NCBI GenBank assembly: GCA_020137815.1 | Contig: CM035355.1 | Location: 6,510,001 to 6,574,000, forward strand | DNA: 64,000 bases | Source: Hormiphora californensis | Taxonomy: Eukaryota; Animalia; Ctenophora | Direction of reading: 5' to 3' | In this document: in pieces, positions 14,993-29,556 of the stretch | Numbering within the stretch: position 1 is the first letter of the stretch | How the letters are laid out: every line of letters begins with the position of its first letter | Translations under genes and position numbers: made by a program | Notes under the pieces: model-generated | The model's input: the letters and a program-made list of their open reading frames with translations, nothing else | Told to the model about the DNA's origin: nothing | Databases searched by the model: none

Positions 14993-17900
14993 ATGACCAT
15001 GCTGCTACTACCGATTTTCTTTCTATCTGTCCGCTGTGATCAGGAGGGGCTACCTCCCCGGTTATTCCAGGGGGACATTGTACATGATGATTTCGTGGAC
15101 CATACTTTTAGATCATCCATACTCCGCAAACAATCCTTACCCCGCAAACAACCCCCTTCAGAAGACCAGTACCTGTATTTAGAGTGTCCTCGACAAAGAC
15201 GCCGAGCAAGAAGAGCAACTGTGCTAGGAAAGGAAAGACTATGGCCGGACGGGGTTGTCTACTACACGTTTGATCCAAGCGTAACACCAAGCAAACGGTC
15301 AGTTATCCAACAAGCCATGTCCCACTGGGAATCTAACACGTGTATACGATTTGAACCCCGTGAAACAGAGTATGATTATCTCTCGTTTTATAACGGTCCA
15401 GGGTGTTTTACAGCGGTTGGGAAGGCAGGAGGTCTGCAGGGTGTCAGTATAAATGACGGTTGTAAGCACATGGGGACGATTGCACACGAGCTCGCACACG
15501 CCTTGGGGTTCTGGCATGAGCAAAGCCGACCTGATCGAGATGAGAGTGTTGAGATAGTCTGGGAGAACATAGAGCCTGGCCGGGAACACAACTTTAACAA
15601 GATGGACTTCACACAAGTTGATAGTCGGTCTGTTATCTACGATTATGGGTCTCTCATGCACTATGGTCCGTACAGTTTTGCCATTGATCCAACTAAGGCG
15701 ACCATCAAGGCAAGAAACGAGACAACGAAGAGAATGGGACAAAGATCCCGGCTAAGTGAGTTGGATATCCTCCAAGCAGAACGGATGTATTGTTGTCCAC
15801 GAGGGGTCTGTGCCAGCGAGAACCCGTGTCTGAGAGGCCTGTGCACGGAATCCCCACGACCACCGTATTACCGGTGTTCGTGTTTTACCGAGTGGTACGG
15901 CGTCAACTGTACCGTGAATGATGACAGATGTGCGATGCAGCCGTGTAGCAACGGGGTCTGTGTAAACGGAACTGCCGATGATTTCACGTGTGTCTGTGAT
16001 CAAGGATACGAGGGGCTGCTGTGTGATAAGGAGATAGATGAGTGTCAAGACTCGCCCTGTCTAAATGGGGGATCCTGTACGGATAAACTACTTGGCTACA
16101 CGTGTGAATGTGAAGAGGGATTCCGTGGCCAGCGGTGTGAGTACCTCAAATGCCCTCGGGGAATGTTTGGGTGTAAGAGTCGGAACACGTGTGTTTCCAC
16201 GGCAACAGTGTGTGATTTTAACAACGACTGTGGCGATGGAAGCGATGAAATGGAGTGTGGAAGTTGTGATTTCGAGGGTGGACAGCTGTGTGGATGGGGA
16301 AATGCAAGTGATGTGTGGCAATGGGGATTATCACGGGGAAGCACAGCCACACCTGATACAGGCCCGGATACGGATTACACAACCGGGACGGCACGGGGAG
16401 TGTATTTGTTGGCAGAGGGGGCCGAGAACGGGGGAGCAGAGACCGCTTCAGTCATCACAACTGTCCTAAAGACTGCAGCCACGGAGTGCTCCATGGAGTT
16501 CGCATACCACATGTTTGGAGAGGGCACTGGATCGCTGGTAGTCAACTTCAGGGACAGGGTTAGCGACCGGGAGTTGTTTCGAATCAGTGGTAACCAGGGA
16601 AACACATGGCATCGAACTCGCCTGGATATTGGCAAACAATTCTACTTCCAAATCTACATCACAGCCGTAACAGGGGACACCAGCGGCCCAGGTGACATTG
16701 CTATTGATGAAGTTACATTTTCAAACTGCCAAACCTTTGAGGACGTCAACGACTGCGAGGGAAATGGTTGTGTTCATGGACAGTGTCTGGACGGGGTTGG
16801 TCTCTACACGTGTCAATGCATGGCTGGCTACACAGGGGAGTTGTGTGAGACTGAGGTGGATGAGTGTGTGGGTAATTGGTGCACAGAACACGGGACATGT
16901 GTTGATCTTGTAAACGGCTACATGTGTGTCTGTCAGTACGGGTTTTTCGGGGATTACTGCGACATTGCCGCTAGTTTCATCTGTGATTTTCAGGACGGTC
17001 TTTGTGAACCGTGGCAGATTTCACAGGATGGAGGGTTTGAGTGGCAGTTGGGTCTCGGTCATACACCTTCCAAGGGAACAGGTCCCGAAGTCGACAGTAC
17101 AACAAACTCAAACACCGGTTACTACTTGTTTATCGAGGGCTCATCGCCACAGAAACCCGGGGACCGAGCAATTATTGAAATGGGTCCACTAACTCATTCC
17201 GAGGACACGTGCCGGGTATCCTTTGCCTATCACATGTATGGGAACACAATGGGTGAAATATCAGTCAGAGTCATACAGAACAGTGGCCCGTCGGAGATCA
17301 TTTGGAGCAAGAGTGGCGACCAAGGAAAGGATTGGCATATCGCCAATATCCAAATGGCAAATTTCACAAACTTCAAAGTTCAGATTATCGGTAAAGTGGG
17401 CACATTCTGGCAATCTGATGGTGCCATAGATGACCTGATGATATCGGGCCGGTGTGGCATCATTGACCCGTGTATAGGAGTTAACTGTGGACCAAACGGG
17501 TTTTGCCGGCGGCAGGGGGTTTCTCAGTACCAGTGTATCTGTATGAACGGCTGGCAGGGTAAAGGATGTGCAGTTCGGGTCAGTAGATGCCATTCACTCA
17601 AATGTCAGAACGAGGGGGTTTGTAAAGATCACGGAGGAGAGGCACCATTTTGTGACTGCAAACCAGGGTTCAGTGGAAAGGAGTGTGAGGTTCAGGAGTG
17701 TAATTTAGAGTGCATTCACGGTTTGTGCACGCACCCCGGACCTCGGTGTGATTGTACCACGGGTTACAGGGGTGAGTTGTGTGAGCTCATGTCGTGCCAA
17801 GATTTCAATCCTTGCTTCAACAATGGGAACTGTACAGAGGATGCAGAGGGATTTATCTGCCAGTGTCCAGAAGGGTATACCGGTGATTTGTGTGAGGATA

Positions 17901-18112
17901 ATACCAGTGTTGTAACTACACAGAGTCCAACTAACAGACATGATGTAGAGGAAAATGAGGTTGAAAAGATGGTAGTGACTCAAAAGCCTGAGCATGTGAA
18001 GTTAAATAATGATGGTAAAAAGCTTGTTGTTGTATCGAGTGTTAATGTGCGATTATTCAGTAATTTTACCTCCTTATTTGTATCTGTTATTGTTGTAATT
18101 ATTATTGTGTAG
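14993..18112 (+). CDS. Astacin (M12A) metalloprotease with EGF x3 - LDLa - MAM - EGF x2 - MAM - EGF x4 and a C-terminal hydrophobic anchor; intronless CDS
   Basis: Signal peptide, FQGDI aspartate switch, RRARR furin site, HELAHALGFWHEQSRPDRD zinc motif, SLMHY Met-turn, CDFNNDCGDGSDE (LDLa), two CDFE/CDFQ...IAIDE/AIDD MAM domains. Confidence 0.93.
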   Translation: MTMLLLPIFFLSVRCDQEGLPPRLFQGDIVHDDFVDHTFRSSILRKQSLPRKQPPSEDQYLYLECPRQRRRARRATVLGKERLWPDGVVYYTFDPSVTPSKRSVIQQAMSHWESNTCIRFEPRETEYDYLSFYNGPGCFTAVGKAGGLQGVSINDGCKHMGTIAHELAHALGFWHEQSRPDRDESVEIVWENIEPGREHNFNKMDFTQVDSRSVIYDYGSLMHYGPYSFAIDPTKATIKARNETTKRMGQRSRLSELDILQAERMYCCPRGVCASENPCLRGLCTESPRPPYYRCSCFTEWYGVNCTVNDDRCAMQPCSNGVCVNGTADDFTCVCDQGYEGLLCDKEIDECQDSPCLNGGSCTDKLLGYTCECEEGFRGQRCEYLKCPRGMFGCKSRNTCVSTATVCDFNNDCGDGSDEMECGSCDFEGGQLCGWGNASDVWQWGLSRGSTATPDTGPDTDYTTGTARGVYLLAEGAENGGAETASVITTVLKTAATECSMEFAYHMFGEGTGSLVVNFRDRVSDRELFRISGNQGNTWHRTRLDIGKQFYFQIYITAVTGDTSGPGDIAIDEVTFSNCQTFEDVNDCEGNGCVHGQCLDGVGLYTCQCMAGYTGELCETEVDECVGNWCTEHGTCVDLVNGYMCVCQYGFFGDYCDIAASFICDFQDGLCEPWQISQDGGFEWQLGLGHTPSKGTGPEVDSTTNSNTGYYLFIEGSSPQKPGDRAIIEMGPLTHSEDTCRVSFAYHMYGNTMGEISVRVIQNSGPSEIIWSKSGDQGKDWHIANIQMANFTNFKVQIIGKVGTFWQSDGAIDDLMISGRCGIIDPCIGVNCGPNGFCRRQGVSQYQCICMNGWQGKGCAVRVSRCHSLKCQNEGVCKDHGGEAPFCDCKPGFSGKECEVQECNLECIHGLCTHPGPRCDCTTGYRGELCELMSCQDFNPCFNNGNCTEDAEGFICQCPEGYTGDLCEDNTSVVTTQSPTNRHDVEENEVEKMVVTQKPEHVKLNNDGKKLVVVSSVNVRLFSNFTSLFVSVIVVIIIV

Positions 18113-23292: not shown

Positions 23293-23333
23293 ATAAAAGA
23301 AGTTATAGATCGATTCAAGCTGCACCCGATTCA

Positions 23334-24245
23334 ATGTTAACCAACGACAGCTTAGCTTCGCCTAGCAAGCACTGGGGTTCGTACTTTAGACATTGTCTCA
23401 AGGACCGAACTACGAGTGAAATAATCGAGGCTACTTCGCGTATTTTTCTCTCCAGTATGAAACTTGCCCGAGCAACAATGAACAATTTTGAAACGGTTAT
23501 CAGTGTGGAAAACCTCGAGAAACAGCTACGTGAATGTAAAGAAGAACTTGACCGCCATCGGGTTAACGTAATCGAGCTTCAGCAAACGGTTATCAACCAC
23601 CAGAAGCAACAACTCAGTACAGTGACAGCATCGGTGCAGAAGGTGAAAGCCTACTCTACTGTGCTAGCACAGAATTGTGCTGCAACCTCCCCCAAAGTGG
23701 GAAAACCACTACCAGTGAATCATCCTACTCCCGTCCAACAGCCCGGAAGAGAGAAGAACATGGTTGTGTTTGGTCTCCCAGAAACAACCGATAGAGTAGC
23801 TAAAACTACTTTAGACGAACTTTTTGAGGAATTAAATGAGAAACCGAAAGTGACTACGATGAAACGCATCGGCGAAAGAAATGAGAAGCGCCCTAGACCG
23901 CTCTTAGTATCCCTGGAGAAGAGAGCGACTCTCCTCGCACTCCTCAGAAAGGCACGAAACCTCAAAGACTCCAAACAGTTTTCGGCTGTTTATCTCTCTC
24001 CGGATCTTACGCCCTCTGAACTGAAAGAGCAAAAAGCTCTAAGGTCCACTTTGAAGCGGATACGATCAGAAGATCCTGACGGCTGCTACTTCATCCGTAA
24101 TAATCTTATCCAAGTGGGATAGTTCCCCACTAACTCACCGTTATCAGAGAACCGTGCTAGGAGCAGGCAGTCTACTGCAGTCCCTTTCAAATTAAGGAAA
24201 ACGAGTTGTCTGTATACAAACTGTGTCAGTGCGGGATATAAACTG
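23334..24245 (+). mobile_element. CR1/L2-type LINE ORF1 plus the first codons of ORF2; 3' truncated
   Basis: Coiled coil, NMVVFGLPE, RIG...RPRPLLV, VYLSPDLTP. Downstream SCLYTNCVS resembles the start of an APE endonuclease. Confidence 0.75.
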
Positions 24246-24865
24246 TCATTTTTATTTATTATTTATTATTTAAGTTCCTTTTTCGTGCAAAAGCGAAATT
24301 TTCTTGAGTTTCTTTATTTTTCTGGTTGGTATTTGCTTGATTCCCCTCCCAGGGGAGGCCTTACGACATCTTAAAGTTCGGCTTTTATCGAACTATGGGC
24401 ATTCGGACCAATTTTTGGCTCTTCGATGCCTGCTGACCACTCACGTTTCCGTCGAGGCGCATGGAACATTCTCCCGAGGGAAGTTTATCTGGCGGAAGAC
24501 CTACCATAGTTTAAAGCACTTCTTGGGGAATGTTTGAAGAGTATGCCGAACCTCCCCGGGGGTATCTTCTTCTTCTATGAGTGTCGGGTCACGGGTGTGA
24601 AACCCTAAAGAACTATCGCTACTTTCGTCATTGCGATTTGGTCGACACTAGTGTCTCCCCGGGGGTATATCCGTATCCCCGGTACCTGGATATACCAGGC
24701 AAAACAATAACTCAATTCTGGGCCGGACACATCTCGTGTCCAGGGAGGGGTCGAGGCTCTGCGAGTAGCTGATACCGGTGCAGTATCTGAGGAAAGTTAT
24801 TTACAAGAGTACAGGATTGCAAGATTACACTGTATAAAATTGAACAATCAAATTGTATAATAGGT

Positions 24866-27800
24866 ATGGGGGTATTCAAAGACGTATTTAATGATCTATT
24901 CCGTGCTCGGTCGTGCTACAAGTGTGCAAGGGAGAAACGAAACTGTGGCTTCCCACTTTTGATTAATGAAATTATTCAAAAAGCAAGGGAAGGAACGGGC
25001 CAGACTGGAACTCGCAGACACTCATTTTACAGGTACGGAACAGTCAATAGGGTTTAGAAATCAGTCTTTATTTCTTCTTTTTCCCCAGGTCGTGCTAGAA
25101 ATAGTTTTCCATTCTTTCTGTTTCCCCAGGCCGTACTAGAGATTAGCATTTATTATTTTTTCCCCCCAGGCCGTACTTCACAGTTTGGATGATGATCGTA
25201 AACACTGCAGTCCTAATAGTATCAGTTTCTATATACAACTTTGCTCCTGTTGGTACGACCTACAAACCTATTGTAAAGTCACTCGTGCGACACAACCTAA
25301 TGTATGAGTTTGTGACCTACATGCAGCAGGAGAACTTCTGGTTAGGCCCAGATTATGAAGATCTGATACATTTTGGTGCAAAGTAAGTAGTACTTTGTTT
25401 TTAGCACATCCATTTCTCTATATCTGAGAGTTTTTAGCACATCCATTTCTCTATATCTGAGAGCTCTCCCTTTATAAAAGTAAGAACAACTTTGATCATT
25501 ATATTTTACATGATAAACGTCACCATATTAGAGTTGTATTGTGAGTTTGATTAACTAATAATCTTCCCCCCCCCCCTTGATAGATATGCACCGTGTATGA
25601 GGCACGATAAGCAAATTGAGGATGCAATAGAGAAAGATATAGAAATTGAAGCAGAGAGTGGGTGTTGTGTGAGGAATGACCTGAATGTCTGTTGGCAATC
25701 TCAAATTGCAAACTGTACCAGTGCTTTTGCTACTTTCCACAACAATACCGTTAGTAATATATCAGTGAGAAAATCACGTGGAATTGTATTGTGATTATAT
25801 CTTTTGTTTTCGATTTTATATCTCTTACCATTTACCAATTAGTCTCTGCAAAATTATTTTTTACAGATTTTTAAACCCATTGTTTTTTAAGGTATGTGGT
25901 ATTGGTAAGGAGTTTTGTGCAGCTGGAACTGTTAATGAGTCGCTATGGAATGGACCAATTACAGACTGGCCTAATTGTCCGGTAGTCAACCGAACCTCAA
26001 TCTGTAAGTATTCTCGTATCAGTATCATATTTGATATATGTATCTGTTAGTATTAATATTCTTGTATCAGTATCATATTTGATATGTATCTGTTAGTATT
26101 AATATTCTTGTATCAGTATCATATCTGATATGTATCTGCTAGGATCTGTTAGTATTAGTATTCTTCTTGTACTGATATATCAGTATTTTATATGTTTTGT
26201 GCCAACCTGTCACACACTGTACTCTGTTATAGGCACTGTCTGGTAGATATATTTCAAACAGATATATATGTGCGTGTACTGTGTGTGTGTCATAATTATG
26301 TGTACAGATGACAGATGTATCACCAGGTGTATCATAGTTATATTATGGATTGTTCTTGAGAGATATCGGTGATATATAATTGATATCCCACTTTAAATAC
26401 TACTACATACGTCATACTCAGATGAGACATGAGCGACATCTCGCCCATCTGAATAGTATCATGATGATGTTCTGTCTGAAATTTCATTTCAAAAGTAACT
26501 CAAAAGTAATCAGCGTCAATAATTTCTATCTCCCCTCTCTCTAGCACGGACAACCGCGCCCACTAAAGCTTGTGAGGTAACAGCTAAACCATGCTGTATT
26601 GGACTCCAGGGACAATGTGCTATAATCAGTGAGGTAATTGCTAATTAGTGAGTTTTTTGAGTAAGTAACCCATTAATTAACAAATCATTAGAGTTCTTGA
26701 CTCTTGAGTAAGTAACACTTTACTCAACAAATAACTAAAGTTCTTGAAACGTGTCCTTTTATATAACGTACAGTAAAATGGATAAATACACCATTCTAGA
26801 CTTGAGCCATGAATGTACTGTGTAAGTTGTCACTCTTTTCCAAGAAGTGCTTCCTCTCTCGTGATAATGAGTTTCACTCAGTTACTTTTCCTGCATTTGC
26901 TAACACCTCGCATACACACATTTAGCCTAAACAGAGTAGCCCAAAAGTGATCATATTTTGGGCATGAAATTATGGAAACTAAAACATCCGGCATAGTAAC
27001 AGTCCCTCAATCGAATAGGATTTAGGAAACCCATTATGAATATTATTCATAACTAATTAATTTTCTTTGATTTTAGGAGGAGTGTGGTATACGAAATGGA
27101 TATTTTCACTCTGATAAATCACTCTGCTCTCAAGTTGATTGCATTCACAGTGTTTGTGGCATCGATGTCACAGGGTAGGTTATATTTTATCTAGAGCTGC
27201 AGGGGAGTTAGATCGTGGATATAAAATCAGCTTTTTAAAACATTTTCTTGTCCTTGCAAAAAACTGCAAGGTGTTTACAACTTTAAATTTCTTACACCCG
27301 TTTCTCTTTTTCAGGTGTGTTCAATTTTATCGGTTTCTACTGCCTACTTTCATCCACTGTGGAGTTGTTCACGTTGTTATGAGGTGAGAAAAACACAAGG
27401 ATTGTTTCTATCCTGAATTTTAAATCATCCAGTATTATTTCTTCTACAGTTTGTTGTTCCTGTGGTTCATAACGCGACCTCTGGAGGAGAGTATTGGGTG
27501 GTGGAGGTGTGGTATTGTCTATCTGGCTAGTGGGTGCGGGGGTACTCTACTCTCTGCCTTCCTTACACCGTACCAGCCTGAGGTAGTATCGCACATCGTC
27601 ATATTATATGATAATTTATGATTTCAGACTGTCTGAATTAGTAGGATCAGGTGTTTTAATGCATGGTAATTCGCTGTCATTTCACTGACAACGATCATCA
27701 AAATTGCTCAACTCACATTATTTCTACTGCAGTATACTGAGTATTGAGTAACTTTGAGCCATTCAACTATTCACTACAGGTTGGTGCATCAGGGTCTCTG

Positions 27801-28710
27801 TTTGGTATTATAGGATGTCATATAGCTCGGGATATTATTGACATTGAAGAGTGGCGGAATAACTGGAGAAAAGTGTGGGAGGACCACCCCACCAAGTTAG
27901 TGTAATATCAGTCTAAGTGATAGTGATTGGTAACATCTAGAGAGATTACTTATAGATTCCAGTAATTGATAAAGTGTAGAAGATGGGTTTTCAACCAGTT
28001 ATTACAGTTATCACTTACCTCCCTTGCAGGAAATTGCTGGTATGGTTGGTGCTGTGTCTCCTGCTTCTAGTTCCCGGCCTTCTTCCCTGGATTGACAATT
28101 GGGGACATGTTGGAGGGTAATTAGTTAATTAGTGCCAATTAAAATTAGCAAAGTTCTTGTCTCTGTTGTGAGAGATACGCCAAGTCACCAAAGTATCCAT
28201 TCAAATCACCCACACACAGATGATACGAATTATTGAATAAACACCATTCAATTCTATTCTCTCTTACCCAGATTGATATTTGGTTTTCTCACTGGGTTTA
28301 TCGTCCTACCCTCACCCGTGAAACGTTGTAGTGGTGACTACGCGATGAGAATTATCATTCGTGTTTTCGTGGGTTGTATCGACGTCCTTGTGGTAATTAG
28401 ATTAATTTGTTTAAAATTGTTTTAACAACTAAGTATAATAGGTTTTAATAAACAAATATATGAGCCTTAGAAATTTGACCCGTATAAGTATCTGTGTCTC
28501 CGAATAACAAGCTTCCATTTCCAGGTTATAATTCTGGTTTACCTGTTCTACCTGAAACAGGATCTTGTTATCCATGCTGGATTCCTCAACTGCATACCAT
28601 TCACTAAAGATTTCTGTGCCGATTCCTGCATGGAACTTCGCACTAGGATTAAACTTTGGTTTGTTGTGGGGTTGAGGGAGGGGGCTTTCAGACAGGGTCA
28701 GAGGGATTAA
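24866..28710 (+). CDS. RHBDF: iRhom (RHBDF)-architecture rhomboid with an intact catalytic Ser/His dyad; multi-exon
   Basis: R|PYFTVW, QQENFWLGP...LIHFGAK|YAPCMR, Cys-rich iRhom homology domain (GCCVRND, PCCIGLQGQC), QFYRFLLPTFIHCG, PYQPE|VGASGSLFG, LPWIDNWGHVGG, CIPFTKDFC. Confidence 0.9.
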
Positions 28711-28734
28711 CCTTTGGTTTGTAGTGGGGTTGCA

Positions 28735-28992
28735 GTCTACAGAAGGGGCCAGGGGTTACAGAAGGGGGGGGGGTTTGGGACAGGGGCCAGGGGTTACAGA
28801 AGAGGGAAGTTGGGACAGGGGCCAGGGGTTACAGAAGGGGGGGGGGGTTTGGGACAGGGGCCAGGGGTTACAGAAGGGGGGGGTTTGGGACAGGGGTCAG
28901 GGGTTACAGAAGGGGGATTTGGGACAGGGGCCAGGGGGTTACAGAAGGGGGGGTTTGGGACAGGGGCCAGGGGGTTACAGAAAAGGGGTTTG
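28735..28992. repeat. G-rich minisatellite (~30-33 bp unit, about 8 copies), G-quadruplex-prone
   Basis: Tandem gggacaggggccaggggttacagaagggggggttt units. Confidence 0.9.
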
Positions 28993-29556
28993 TAGACAGG
29001 ACGGAAGGGAAATTGAGGCAGCAATTTGAGAGTTTGGGACTGTTTACGAGTGGGTAGGGGAGTTGTTTTGGGTGATTCACACAAAACCATTAACTCAGAT
29101 ATTTATCCTGCAGATCAGAGACAGACAGATGACAGACAGACAATCTCAAGGCGTACAAACATGACTGACTGGCCTACTGGCTCAAAAGACGGACTGACTG
29201 GAGAATTTTTATAGACTGATATTTGATATCAAAACACGGACTGACTGGAGCAATTTTACAGACTGGCACGGGGTTATTTTCAATTTTGTATTTCAAAAAT
29301 TTCATTTTAATTAATATTCCAAACTTTTGATCAAGATCGGGCGTTTTTAATTGCATCCCAAGCCTCATTTCTTTCTTGACAGATTATTGAGGGAGGGGAG
29401 GGTCCCTTATCTATGCGTCTGAATTTAAATTTACTTGTACTTTAATTGTACTTTCATTGGTGCAATGGGGGTGCAATTCAATTTATCTTTTTTCTCATTT
29501 TCCACCTCTTCCCTCTTTATCCTGACAGTTCTTACCCTCCTCTACTAGCCTAGTCT

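What the first reader, a model, noticed from the sequence alone, without database searches (positions are those of the whole stretch)
27780..28108. iRhom-architecture protein that retains the rhomboid catalytic dyad: a candidate active iRhom
Seen: the gene has iRhom hallmarks (RPYFT TM1, QQENFWxGP, a long Cys-rich luminal iRhom homology domain, CIPFT C-terminus). TM4 reads PYQPE|VGASGSLFG (Ser codon tca at 27789-27791) and TM6 reads IDNWGHVGG (His codon at 28106-28108). Established: mammalian and fly iRhoms are pseudoproteases defined by GPx in place of GxS (human EVGPAGSQFG), while active rhomboids have GxSG plus a TM6 His. Inference: this could be a proteolytically active member of the iRhom lineage, representing the state before the enzyme died, or a reversion.
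Basis: partly seen in the sequence, partly recalled or inferred. Interest (0 to 1): 0.92.

Follow-up and report, generated by a model that had tools for sequence, protein, structure and literature searches.

The report
Ctenophore iRhom without the inactivating proline
This comb-jelly gene belongs to the iRhom family of "dead" membrane proteases, but like every comb-jelly iRhom sampled it lacks the proline that defines the family as dead and keeps the catalytic serine and histidine, so it may show how this enzyme became a pseudoenzyme.

Summary
An 11-exon gene (25170-28710, +) encodes iRhom TM1, a complete iRhom homology domain (IRHD, 16/16 cysteines), a rhomboid core, TM7 and CIPFT. TM4 reads VGASG (Ser 27789-91) and TM6 reads GHVGG (His 28106-08).

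It is not a one-off.
- The genome is a ctenophore's and holds three IRHD rhomboids. The window gene ("B") is a fast-evolving paralogue of the conserved ctenophore iRhom ("A", 1.27 Mb away).
- A in this genome and in all 9 database ctenophore clusters, including Mnemiopsis, reads EVGASGALYG.
- All 135 non-ctenophore iRhoms whose TM4 motif my pattern search recognised read GP[A/S/T]G.
- Sponge and cnidarian iRhoms read GPSG and keep Ser; most iRhoms keep the TM6 His. So the distinguishing trait is the missing proline, not the dyad.

In trees, B plus A sit inside the canonical iRhom clade (support 100).

A caveat applies. The oxyanion-hole Asn of TM2 is Ser/Thr here, as in all iRhoms, so activity is plausible (about one in three) but unproven.

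Retention versus reversion is unresolved (AU p 0.42).

IRHD rhomboids with a complete catalytic set (WR, HxxxN, GSSG, His) exist in ichthyosporeans, so the architecture predates animals.

I found no paper on this in the held library. No RNA data were available, and the 5' end of B is unresolved.

The parts
24866..25032 (+). Candidate first coding exon (ATG to CAG|GTACGG donor), unverified. Its phase completes the split Arg codon of RPYFT.
   Evidence: Script scan of 23300-25169 for ATG...GT exons of the right phase. No Pfam match. No RNA support. No similarity to the N-terminus of paralogue A.
25170..25382 (+). Exon 1: TM1 (RPYFT...) and the start of the IRHD (QQENFWLGP...HFGAK).
   Evidence: E 1e-18 to human iRhom1 chains. 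70% identical to the fragment P0001 from another data set.
25584..25749 (+). Exon 2: IRHD (YAPCMR..., GCC motif).
25892..26003 (+). Exon 3: IRHD.
26545..26633 (+). Exon 4: IRHD (CEV..PCCIG..G.C motif).
27077..27174 (+). Exon 5: end of the IRHD (GYFH...LCSQV.C...CG).
27315..27383 (+). Exon 6: QFYR (the WR-like L1 motif) and TM2 (FIHCGVVHVVM). His codons are at 27355-57 and 27370-72. The residue at the place of GlpG Asn154 is Ser, with its codon split between 27382-83 and 27450.
   Evidence: Mapping to GlpG through.
27450..27582 (+). Exon 7: TM2 end, TM3, ending ...PYQPE.
   Evidence: Pfam Rhomboid E 2e-7.
27780..27895 (+). Exon 8: TM4 with VGASGSLFG. GASG is at 27783-27794 and Ser TCA at 27789-27791. 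Ala GCA at 27786-88 stands where other iRhoms have Pro.
   Evidence: Pfam Rhomboid. Alignments.
28030..28116 (+). Exon 9: TM5 and the start of TM6 (WIDNWGHVGG). His CAT is at 28106-28108.
28272..28392 (+). Exon 10: the rest of TM6 (completes HVGGLIFG, i.e. HxxGxxxG) and the loop to TM7.
28525..28710 (+). Exon 11: TM7, NCIPFT, C-terminal tail, stop TAA at 28708-10. The two juxta-TM7 cysteines conserved in other iRhoms are missing.

Best explanation
IDENTITY (shown). The window holds an intact multi-exon gene of a ctenophore. It encodes a 7-TM rhomboid-superfamily protein of the canonical iRhom (RHBDF) clade: TM1, a full Cys-rich iRhom homology domain, the 6-TM rhomboid core, TM7 and a CIPFT tail. 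It is a fast-evolving ctenophore-specific paralogue, which I call iRhom-B. The conserved ctenophore iRhom (iRhom-A) lies 1.27 Mb away on the same chromosome. Both paralogues, and A in all sampled ctenophores, have Ala where every other animal iRhom has the family-defining proline. TM4 is therefore a normal rhomboid GASG, and TM6 keeps His inside HxxGxxxG.

MECHANISM (inferred). I think it most likely works as other iRhoms do. It would be a membrane-embedded binder of transmembrane client proteins, using the rhomboid core and IRHD to control their trafficking or stability. An ADAM17-like gene is present in the genome as a possible client. Proteolysis would be absent or weak, because the TM2 Asn of the oxyanion hole was already lost (Ser here, Thr/Ser in all iRhoms) on the long stem branch that all iRhoms share.

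The proline-less motif is either the state before the proline was fixed in the other animals or a single-base reversion. I give about 55:45 for retention. I put the chance that the protein really cleaves substrates at about one in three.
For: Gene model and motifs:
- Gene model.
- Full-length 48% identity, E 1e-147, to Mnemiopsis iRhom-A; 37-39% to other animal iRhoms.
- The IRHD alone gives E 1e-45 to vertebrate and cnidarian iRhoms.
- 82 of 101 family-invariant positions and 18 of 20 conserved cysteines are kept.

Phylogeny:
- B + A form a clade at 100/99 (careful tree).
- The canonical iRhom clade including them has support 100 when rooted with plant-type rhomboids.

The motif across taxa:
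- GASG in all 9 ctenophore A clusters and in this genome's A.
- GP[AST]G in 135 non-ctenophore iRhoms.
- No GP-type iRhom locus in this genome.

Residue mapping by HMMER:
- Ctenophore evgaSgalyg against human evgpAgsqfg.
- GlpG GlSG, HilfN and H against the iRhom positions.
- The Asn position is S/T in all iRhoms.
- N154 is the stable oxyanion-hole hydrogen-bond donor in GlpG (PMC4253528).
- Introducing the proline is sufficient to kill active rhomboids (PMC3149277).

Other:
- ADAM17_MPD hits over the Pfam cut-off in this genome.
- In human iRhom2, ADAM17 binds through TM1, away from the active-site position (PMC12615303).
Against: - There is no known inactivating lesion in TM4 or TM6. GxSG, His, HxxGxxxG, the aromatic residue at Ser+4, the YR (WR-like) motif and the H150-equivalent His are all present, so an active enzyme cannot be excluded.
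- From memory (Lemberg et al. 2005; Baker et al. 2007, not checked here), the Asn is not strictly essential in rhomboids.
- There is no expression evidence for B.
- The N-terminal cytoplasmic domain typical of iRhoms was not found for B.
- A retrotransposon sits directly upstream of B.
- B has lost a few residues that are invariant in other iRhoms. One is the Glu at the end of TM4, which is Arg in B.
Confidence: 0.55

Rival explanations
1. Active iRhom. Ctenophore iRhom-A and/or iRhom-B are working intramembrane serine proteases. They would use the TM4 Ser and TM6 His, with the TM2 His and the Ser/Thr hydroxyl or backbone amides serving as the oxyanion hole.
For: - GASG, His and HxxGxxxG are intact, with no proline.
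- The proline alone is enough to inactivate real rhomboids (PMC3149277), and here it is absent.
- The motif is unchanged along B's long branch, 1.06-1.63 substitutions per site.
- No secretase-type RHBDL-like gene was picked up in this genome by the Pfam scan. Only A, B, C and a PARL-like gene were found. That scan is a lower bound.
Against: - The Asn154 equivalent is lost, as in all pseudoprotease iRhoms.
- Ser and His are equally unchanged in sponge and cnidarian GPSG iRhoms, with 0 changes over comparable tree length, so their conservation says nothing about catalysis.
- The long shared stem (0.97) suggests the functional shift came before ctenophores split off.
- No biochemical data exist.
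Confidence: 0.33
2. Polarity axis, separate from function: reversion. The common ancestor of all animal iRhoms already had GPSG, and stem ctenophores changed Pro back to Ala by one transversion (CCN to GCN).
For: - The best rooted tree puts ctenophores with sponges: ((Por,Cten),(Cni,Bil)). On that tree two steps are needed.
- The careful unrooted tree supports Cten+Por at 98/96.
- A proline at the same place arose independently in a choanoflagellate protein (P0278), so the site can change.
Against: - The supports for the basal splits are only 72 and 43.
- Holding all GP-type iRhoms as one clade, with ctenophores outside, costs 0.87 lnL, p-AU 0.415.
- The outgroups (ichthyosporean GSSG, plant-type GASG) lack the proline.
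- The proline is otherwise invariant in 135 sequences.
Confidence: 0.45
3. iRhom-B is a decaying duplicate. It would be an unexpressed or non-functional copy whose motifs are only leftovers.
For: - Its terminal branch is 3-8 times longer than the tree's median terminal branch.
- No N-terminal domain was found.
- A retrotransposon and another unassigned ORF lie directly upstream.
- The two juxta-TM7 cysteines and a few invariant residues are lost.
- No reads are available.
Against: - 462 codons over 11 exons have no stop or frameshift, and all splice sites are canonical.
- 16/16 IRHD cysteines and 82/101 invariant positions are kept.
- A 70%-identical fragment exists in another data set (P0001).
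Confidence: 0.07
4. Artefact. Assembly or base error, or mis-splicing, creates GASG from a real GPx.
For: No reads could be laid on the site.
Against: - The motif lies inside one exon.
- Paralogue A in the same genome and 9 independent ctenophore protein clusters from other data sets read the same GASG.
Confidence: 0.01

Closest known systems
Animal iRhoms (RHBDF1/iRhom1, RHBDF2/iRhom2, Drosophila rhomboid-5)
   Same: - 7-TM topology, RPYFT TM1, the IRHD with all 16 cysteines, the QFYR motif, TM2 HxxxxH followed by Ser/Thr instead of Asn, TM6 His, and the CIPFT tail.
- E 1e-116 between ctenophore A and the human iRhom2 chains of the cryo-EM entries.
- Inside the same clade at support 100.
   Different: - Ala replaces the 'invariant' proline, so the motif is GASG rather than GPxG.
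- Ctenophore A has a short N-terminal domain of about 170 aa with no Pfam Rhomboid_SP match. B has none detectable.
- B lacks the two cysteines before TM7.
Active secretase-type rhomboid proteases (Drosophila Rhomboid-1, RHBDL2, plant RBLs, bacterial GlpG)
   Same: GxSG in TM4, His in HxxGxxxG in TM6, an aromatic residue at Ser+4, the Arg of the WR motif, and the TM2 His.
   Different: - The TM2 Asn of the oxyanion hole is missing. It is present in the plant-type sequences, in ichthyosporean IRHD rhomboids and in this genome's own PARL-like gene.
- The short L1 loop is replaced by a ~180-aa disulphide-rich IRHD.
- There is an extra TM7 with a CIPFT tail.
Uncharacterised IRHD-bearing rhomboids of unicellular holozoans (Creolimax P0273, Amoebidium P0374, Ichthyophonus P0394; choanoflagellate proteins such as Salpingoeca rosetta PTSG_07830)
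   Same: A Cys-rich loop homologous to the IRHD (B's IRHD alone gives E 6e-21 to 6e-25 and 8e-12), GAKxSPCMR, TM7 and NCIPYT.
   Different: - They lie outside the canonical iRhom clade and have 14 rather than 16 loop cysteines.
- Ichthyosporean members keep the full set QWWR, HxxxN, GSSG and His.
- Choanoflagellate members are inactivated differently (GA[D/N]P).

Membership tests
iRhom (RHBDF) family | Rhomboid 6-TM core plus a seventh TM helix and a conserved C-terminal CIPFT-type motif | tested here: met
   Pfam PF01694 on exons 7-9. The full-length alignment to iRhoms runs to the C-terminus. CIPFT is at 28591-28605.
iRhom (RHBDF) family | Large conserved Cys-rich iRhom homology domain between TM1 and TM2 | tested here: met
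   The IRHD alone gives E 1e-45 to vertebrate and cnidarian iRhoms. 16/16 conserved IRHD cysteines are present. Exon 1 gives E 1e-18 to human iRhom1 chains.
iRhom (RHBDF) family | Invariant proline before the catalytic-serine position (GPx instead of GxS; Zettl et al. 2011, PMC3149277) | tested here: not met
   GCA (Ala) at 27786-88. The motif is GASG. The same holds in all ctenophore A orthologues.
iRhom (RHBDF) family | Catalytic Ser and/or His missing | tested here: not met
   Ser 27789-91 and His 28106-08 are both present. All sampled sponge and cnidarian iRhoms also keep Ser, and most iRhoms keep the TM6 His, so this criterion is not universal in the family.
iRhom (RHBDF) family | Long N-terminal cytoplasmic domain | tested here: inconclusive
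   No match to A's N-terminus anywhere in the window. Only an unverified 56-residue candidate first exon was found. Paralogue A has about 170 residues with juxtamembrane homology to human iRhom2.
iRhom (RHBDF) family | Phylogenetic placement inside the clade of animal iRhoms | tested here: met
   The canonical clade has support 100 and a stem of 0.97, with B + A inside it. B + A form a clade at 100/99.
iRhom (RHBDF) family | No proteolytic activity; binds and regulates TM clients such as ADAM17 | not testable with these tools
   Only indirect evidence: ADAM17_MPD domain hits exist in the genome.
Active rhomboid serine protease (MEROPS S54) | GxSG in TM4 with the nucleophilic Ser | tested here: met
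   VGASG. It aligns to the GlSG of H. influenzae GlpG through.
Active rhomboid serine protease (MEROPS S54) | General-base His in TM6 within HxxGxxxG | tested here: met
   GHVGG|LIFG across exons 9 and 10.
Active rhomboid serine protease (MEROPS S54) | TM2 HxxxN (Asn154 of GlpG, oxyanion hole) | tested here: not met
   HVVMS: Ser stands at the Asn position. The role of N154 is described in PMC4253528.
Active rhomboid serine protease (MEROPS S54) | WR motif in the L1 region | tested here: inconclusive
   QFYR: the Arg is kept and the Trp is replaced by Tyr, as in all iRhoms. Ichthyosporean IRHD rhomboids have QWWR.
Active rhomboid serine protease (MEROPS S54) | Ser-dependent cleavage of TM substrates or labelling by activity-based probes | not testable with these tools
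   This needs expression and biochemistry.

The most novel reading that the evidence does not exclude
Ctenophore iRhoms, both the conserved A and the window's B, are catalytically competent intramembrane proteases that already carry the full iRhom architecture. They would be living intermediates of the enzyme-to-pseudoenzyme transition. The 'invariant' proline would then be a shared derived character of all non-ctenophore animals, a rare amino-acid change that sides with ctenophores as sister to other animals. Ichthyosporean IRHD rhomboids would represent the fully active earlier stage.
Probability: 0.25. Interest if true: 0.88.

Novelty: new variant of a known kind. Interest (0 to 1): 0.68.

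Why it matters
iRhoms are the textbook example of a pseudoenzyme that gained a new role, as regulators of ADAM17/TNF and EGFR-ligand release. The literature describes their proline as invariant and the family as restricted to animals (PMC3149277, PMC6451368).

This work shows three things.
- A whole phylum's iRhoms lack that proline while keeping GxSG and His.
- They differ from sponge and cnidarian iRhoms in the motif essentially by one residue (EVGASGALYG versus EVGPSGALFG).
- IRHD-bearing rhomboids with a complete catalytic set exist in unicellular relatives of animals.

Together these give a natural series: active IRHD rhomboid, then Asn lost, then proline fixed. Simple reciprocal mutants would make the question of how and when this protease died directly testable. 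The series also offers one more, if weak, character for the ctenophore/sponge rooting debate.

Tried and rejected
- **RNA support.** The look-up of sequencing runs listed one small run with none of the sampled words. Read laying placed nothing on 24100-29000. Junctions, the 5' end and expression remain untested.
The contigs of P0001 (B-type fragment) and P0002 could not be read.
- **Metagenome scan.** A related-loci scan of metagenome contigs with a B-specific exon-1 alignment found no relatives.
- **N-terminal exons.** tblastn with A's N-terminus over the whole window found nothing.
- **Joined model not sent to search tools.** The spliced model of B has no reference. It was therefore never sent to a search, fold or database tool. 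Only single exons were sent by reference. The joined translation was used only inside local scripts for blastp, MAFFT and trees. Searching the protein databases with full-length B and folding B were left out for that reason.
- **Dyad geometry.** The structure tool returns no coordinates, so Ser-His distances cannot be measured. I did not run it.
- **Extra constraint on Ser in ctenophores.** Rejected as evidence. Cnidarian and sponge GPSG iRhoms also show 0 changes at that site.
- **Active-like signature columns.** Only 6 qualified, and A and B each follow the iRhom state in 3 of them and the active state in 1. Uninformative.
- **Lemberg & Freeman 2007** (PMC2045146) is not held.
- **Literature searches.** Searches for iRhom with ctenophore, choanoflagellate, holozoan or Capsaspora terms found nothing relevant. 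The rhomboid/Mnemiopsis/pseudoprotease search listed 15 papers, none of which holds 'Mnemiopsis'. This is absence in the held library only.
Full report
**What is in the window.** Reading the DNA gives a + strand gene of 11 coding exons:

| Exon | Coordinates |
|---|---|
| 1 | 25170-25382 |
| 2 | 25584-25749 |
| 3 | 25892-26003 |
| 4 | 26545-26633 |
| 5 | 27077-27174 |
| 6 | 27315-27383 |
| 7 | 27450-27582 |
| 8 | 27780-27895 |
| 9 | 28030-28116 |
| 10 | 28272-28392 |
| 11 | 28525-28710 (stop) |

All have AG/GT borders. Ten were printed by script. I corrected the exon-10 donor and added exon 11 by reading. The joined translation, made only inside scripts, is 462 residues without a stop.

- PYQPE ends exon 7.
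- Exon 8 begins GTT GGT GCA TCA GGG (VGASG). The Ser codon is at 27789-91.
- Exon 9 carries WIDNWGHVGG. The His codon is at 28106-08.
- GASG lies wholly inside exon 8, so it does not depend on a splice choice.
- RPYFT, QQENFWLGP and CIPFT are present.

Homology to iRhoms is strong.
- Exon 1 matches the human iRhom1 chains of PDB 9xy4/9q7y at E 1e-18.
- Exons 7-9 match Pfam Rhomboid.
- The IRHD alone (177 residues) matches vertebrate and cnidarian iRhoms at E 1e-45.
- All 16 conserved IRHD cysteines are present, and 82 of 101 positions that are near-invariant in other iRhoms are kept.

**Organism and paralogues.** The window is C6:6510001-6574000 of a 110.7-Mb, 45-contig assembly. The nearest proteins are ctenophore proteins. 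One is named Mnemiopsis leidyi (P0153). Another is a Pleurobrachia bachei protein 93% identical to a gene of this genome (P0267). From memory of assembly sizes I guess Hormiphora californensis, which is an inference.

The genome has three IRHD-bearing rhomboid genes and no more, within the sensitivity of exon-wise searches.
- **A**, at C6:7.805-7.813 Mb, is 1.27 Mb from the window. It is multi-exon and about 80-90% identical in the rhomboid core to P0003. Its TM4 is VGASGALYG and its TM6 is HIGG. It shares the intron positions E|VGASG and HxGG| with the window gene.
- **B** is the window gene. It is 47-48% identical to A-type proteins over its full length, E 1e-147.
- **C**, at C1:4229536-4230819, is an intronless 427-codon ORF. 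Its TM4 is GSGG, with Gly at the Ser position.

A PARL-like gene on C3 has HxxxN, GFSN and His.

**The trait is phylum-wide.** All 9 ctenophore A-type clusters come from independent data sets and are 61-75% identical to P0003. All read PYQPEVGASGALYG and WIDN..H.GGFLFG. All 135 non-ctenophore iRhoms in which my pattern search found the motif read GP[A/S/T]G.

HMMER's own alignments fix the register.
- Ctenophore evgaSgalyg aligns with human iRhom2 evgpAgsqfg.
- H. influenzae GlpG GlSG, HilfN and aaH align with the corresponding iRhom positions.

So the ctenophore Ala stands at the place of the iRhom proline, and the ctenophore Ser at the place of the catalytic Ser.

The TM6 His is kept in 124 of 132 iRhoms with a recognisable motif. 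Ser-to-Ala occurs only within Bilateria, at least 3 times. The ctenophore motif EVGASGALYG differs from the sponge/octocoral/jellyfish motif EVGPSGALFG essentially by Pro/Ala. Proline to alanine is one transversion (GCA and GCG in B and A).

**What argues against activity.** The TM2 Asn is the stable hydrogen-bond donor to the scissile carbonyl or oxyanion in GlpG (GlpG HxxxN; PMC4253528). Here it is Ser in B (HVVMS) and Thr/Ser in A, exactly as in all other iRhoms. It is present in the genome's PARL-like gene, in plant-type rhomboids and in ichthyosporean IRHD rhomboids.

From memory (Lemberg et al. 2005; Baker et al. 2007, not checked here), Asn mutants of bacterial rhomboids keep partial activity. 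So this is a caution, not a refutation.

Conservation of Ser in ctenophores carries no weight. It shows 0 changes over subtree length 1.9, and cnidarian GPSG iRhoms show 0 changes over 2.3.

**Phylogeny.**
- In a careful tree (38 rows, LG+C20), B is sister to the ctenophore A clade at 100/99. B's terminal branch is 1.63 against a median of 0.21.
- A tree rooted with plant-type rhomboids (58 rows, quick) recovers the canonical iRhom clade at support 100 with a stem of 0.97. B + A are inside it at 100.
- The basal order is unresolved: ((Por,Cten) 72, (Cni,Bil) 43).
- Holding all GP-type iRhoms together, with ctenophores outside, costs 0.87 lnL, p-AU 0.415.

A single gain of the proline after ctenophores branched off is therefore compatible with the data, but so is a reversion.

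**The architecture predates animals.** Searching with paralogue C found IRHD-bearing rhomboids in several other groups.
- Choanoflagellates: Salpingoeca rosetta PTSG_07830, Choanoeca, Microstomoeca and Stephanoeca. TM4 reads GA[D/N]P, which looks dead.
- A second Oscarella protein reads GGSP.
- Ichthyosporeans: Creolimax P0273, Amoebidium P0374 and P0393 carry QWWR, HxxxN, GSSG, HxGGxxxG, 14 loop cysteines and NCIPYT. That is a complete catalytic set on an iRhom-like architecture. The partial Ichthyophonus sequence P0394 shows QWWR, HxxxN and the TM6 His, but its TM4 is missing.

B's IRHD alone matches them at E 6e-21 to 6e-25, and S. rosetta at 8e-12. In the rooted tree they lie outside the canonical clade. 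Ctenophore C groups with the choanoflagellate/Oscarella-2 set. One choanoflagellate protein (S. kvevrii P0278) has GPSG together with HxxxN, an independent proline at the same site.

**Interpretation.**
- Shown: the window gene is an intact, divergent ctenophore paralogue of the canonical iRhom clade. It lacks the family-defining proline and has GxSG plus His.
- Inferred: it most likely still works as an iRhom-type binder and regulator of transmembrane clients. The Asn loss and the long common stem indicate a functional shift before ctenophores diverged. ADAM17_MPD-bearing genes exist in the genome. In human iRhom2 the ADAM17 helix binds TM1, away from the old active site (PMC12615303). Real protease activity is plausible, about one in three.
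- B as a dying copy is unlikely given the intact frame and conserved cysteines. However, its 5' end is unresolved. No similarity to A's N-terminus was found. There is only an unverified candidate first exon at 24866-25032. A retrotransposon lies directly upstream.

**Literature.** Zettl et al. 2011 (PMC3149277) and Dulloo et al. 2019 (PMC6451368) describe the proline as invariant or conserved and iRhoms as found only in, or conserved in, metazoans. Zettl et al. show that introducing the proline kills Rhomboid-1 and AarA and strongly reduces RHBDL2 activity. Full-text searches for iRhom together with ctenophore, choanoflagellate or holozoan terms found no relevant paper, and none of the 15 papers listed for rhomboid/Mnemiopsis/pseudoprotease holds 'Mnemiopsis'. 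Lemberg & Freeman 2007 is not held. This is absence in the held library, not proof of novelty.

**Limits.**
- No RNA reads.
- The joined B model was not sent to any search or fold tool, because it has no reference. It was searched exon by exon only.
- No coordinates were available for dyad geometry.
- B orthologues are known only from one 88-residue fragment (P0001).

Noticed in passing
G000:C1:4229536-4230819 (L003:832-2115): A third IRHD rhomboid of this genome. It is intronless, 427 codons, has almost no N-terminal tail, and its TM4 is GSGG (Ser position = Gly). It is conserved in Pleurobrachia (93%) and other ctenophores (GAGG/GSGS). It groups with the choanoflagellate and Oscarella-2 proteins rather than with canonical iRhoms.
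   Followed up: partly
Proteins P0273 (Creolimax), P0374/P0276 (Amoebidium), P0393, P0394 (Ichthyophonus): Ichthyosporean rhomboids with an IRHD-like 14-Cys loop, TM7 and NCIPYT. P0273, P0374 and P0393 have a complete catalytic set (QWWR, HxxxN, GSSG, HxGGxxxG). P0394 is partial and lacks TM4. The iRhom architecture therefore exists outside animals and looks active there.
   Followed up: partly
Proteins P0286, P0282, P0283, P0285, P0345, P0279, P0278: Choanoflagellate IRHD rhomboids read GA[D/N]P at TM4, a different way of losing the serine. Salpingoeca kvevrii P0278 instead has GPSG with HxxxN, an independent proline at the iRhom position.
   Followed up: partly
G000:C6:7805821-7812891 (L006:7821 to L007:4891): The conserved ctenophore iRhom-A gene lies on the same chromosome, 1.27 Mb from the window gene. 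It has about 170 N-terminal residues and shares intron positions with B.
   Followed up: yes
G000:C2:8998971-8999117 and C2:1802636-1802767: Two exon-level matches to the ADAM17 membrane-proximal domain (PF16698), both over the curated cut-off. These are candidate ADAM17-like clients.
   Followed up: no
window 14993-18112 (+): A single-exon 1039-codon ORF: astacin metalloprotease, LDL-receptor class A, two MAM domains and many EGF repeats (Pfam).
   Followed up: partly
It is followed by a 284-codon ORF with no Pfam match. Both sit directly upstream of the iRhom-B gene and leave little room for a long 5' coding region.
   Followed up: partly
window 28744-28982: A 36-bp G-rich tandem array (6.6 copies, 88% matches) begins just after the stop codon. 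The last ~19 codons of the gene resemble the array's flank.
   Followed up: no
window 25397-25463, 26009-26142, 26657-26747: Short tandem duplications (33, 46 and 47 bp) inside introns 1, 3 and 4 of the gene. The acceptor region of exon 1 (ccccaggccgtact) also occurs twice, at about 25127 and about 25163.
   Followed up: no
G000:C3:6453966-6454415 (L008): A PARL-like rhomboid gene with HxxxN, GFSN and His. It is the only rhomboid with the TM2 Asn that the exon-wise Pfam scan picked up in this genome. No RHBDL-type gene was seen, but the scan is a lower bound.
   Followed up: partly
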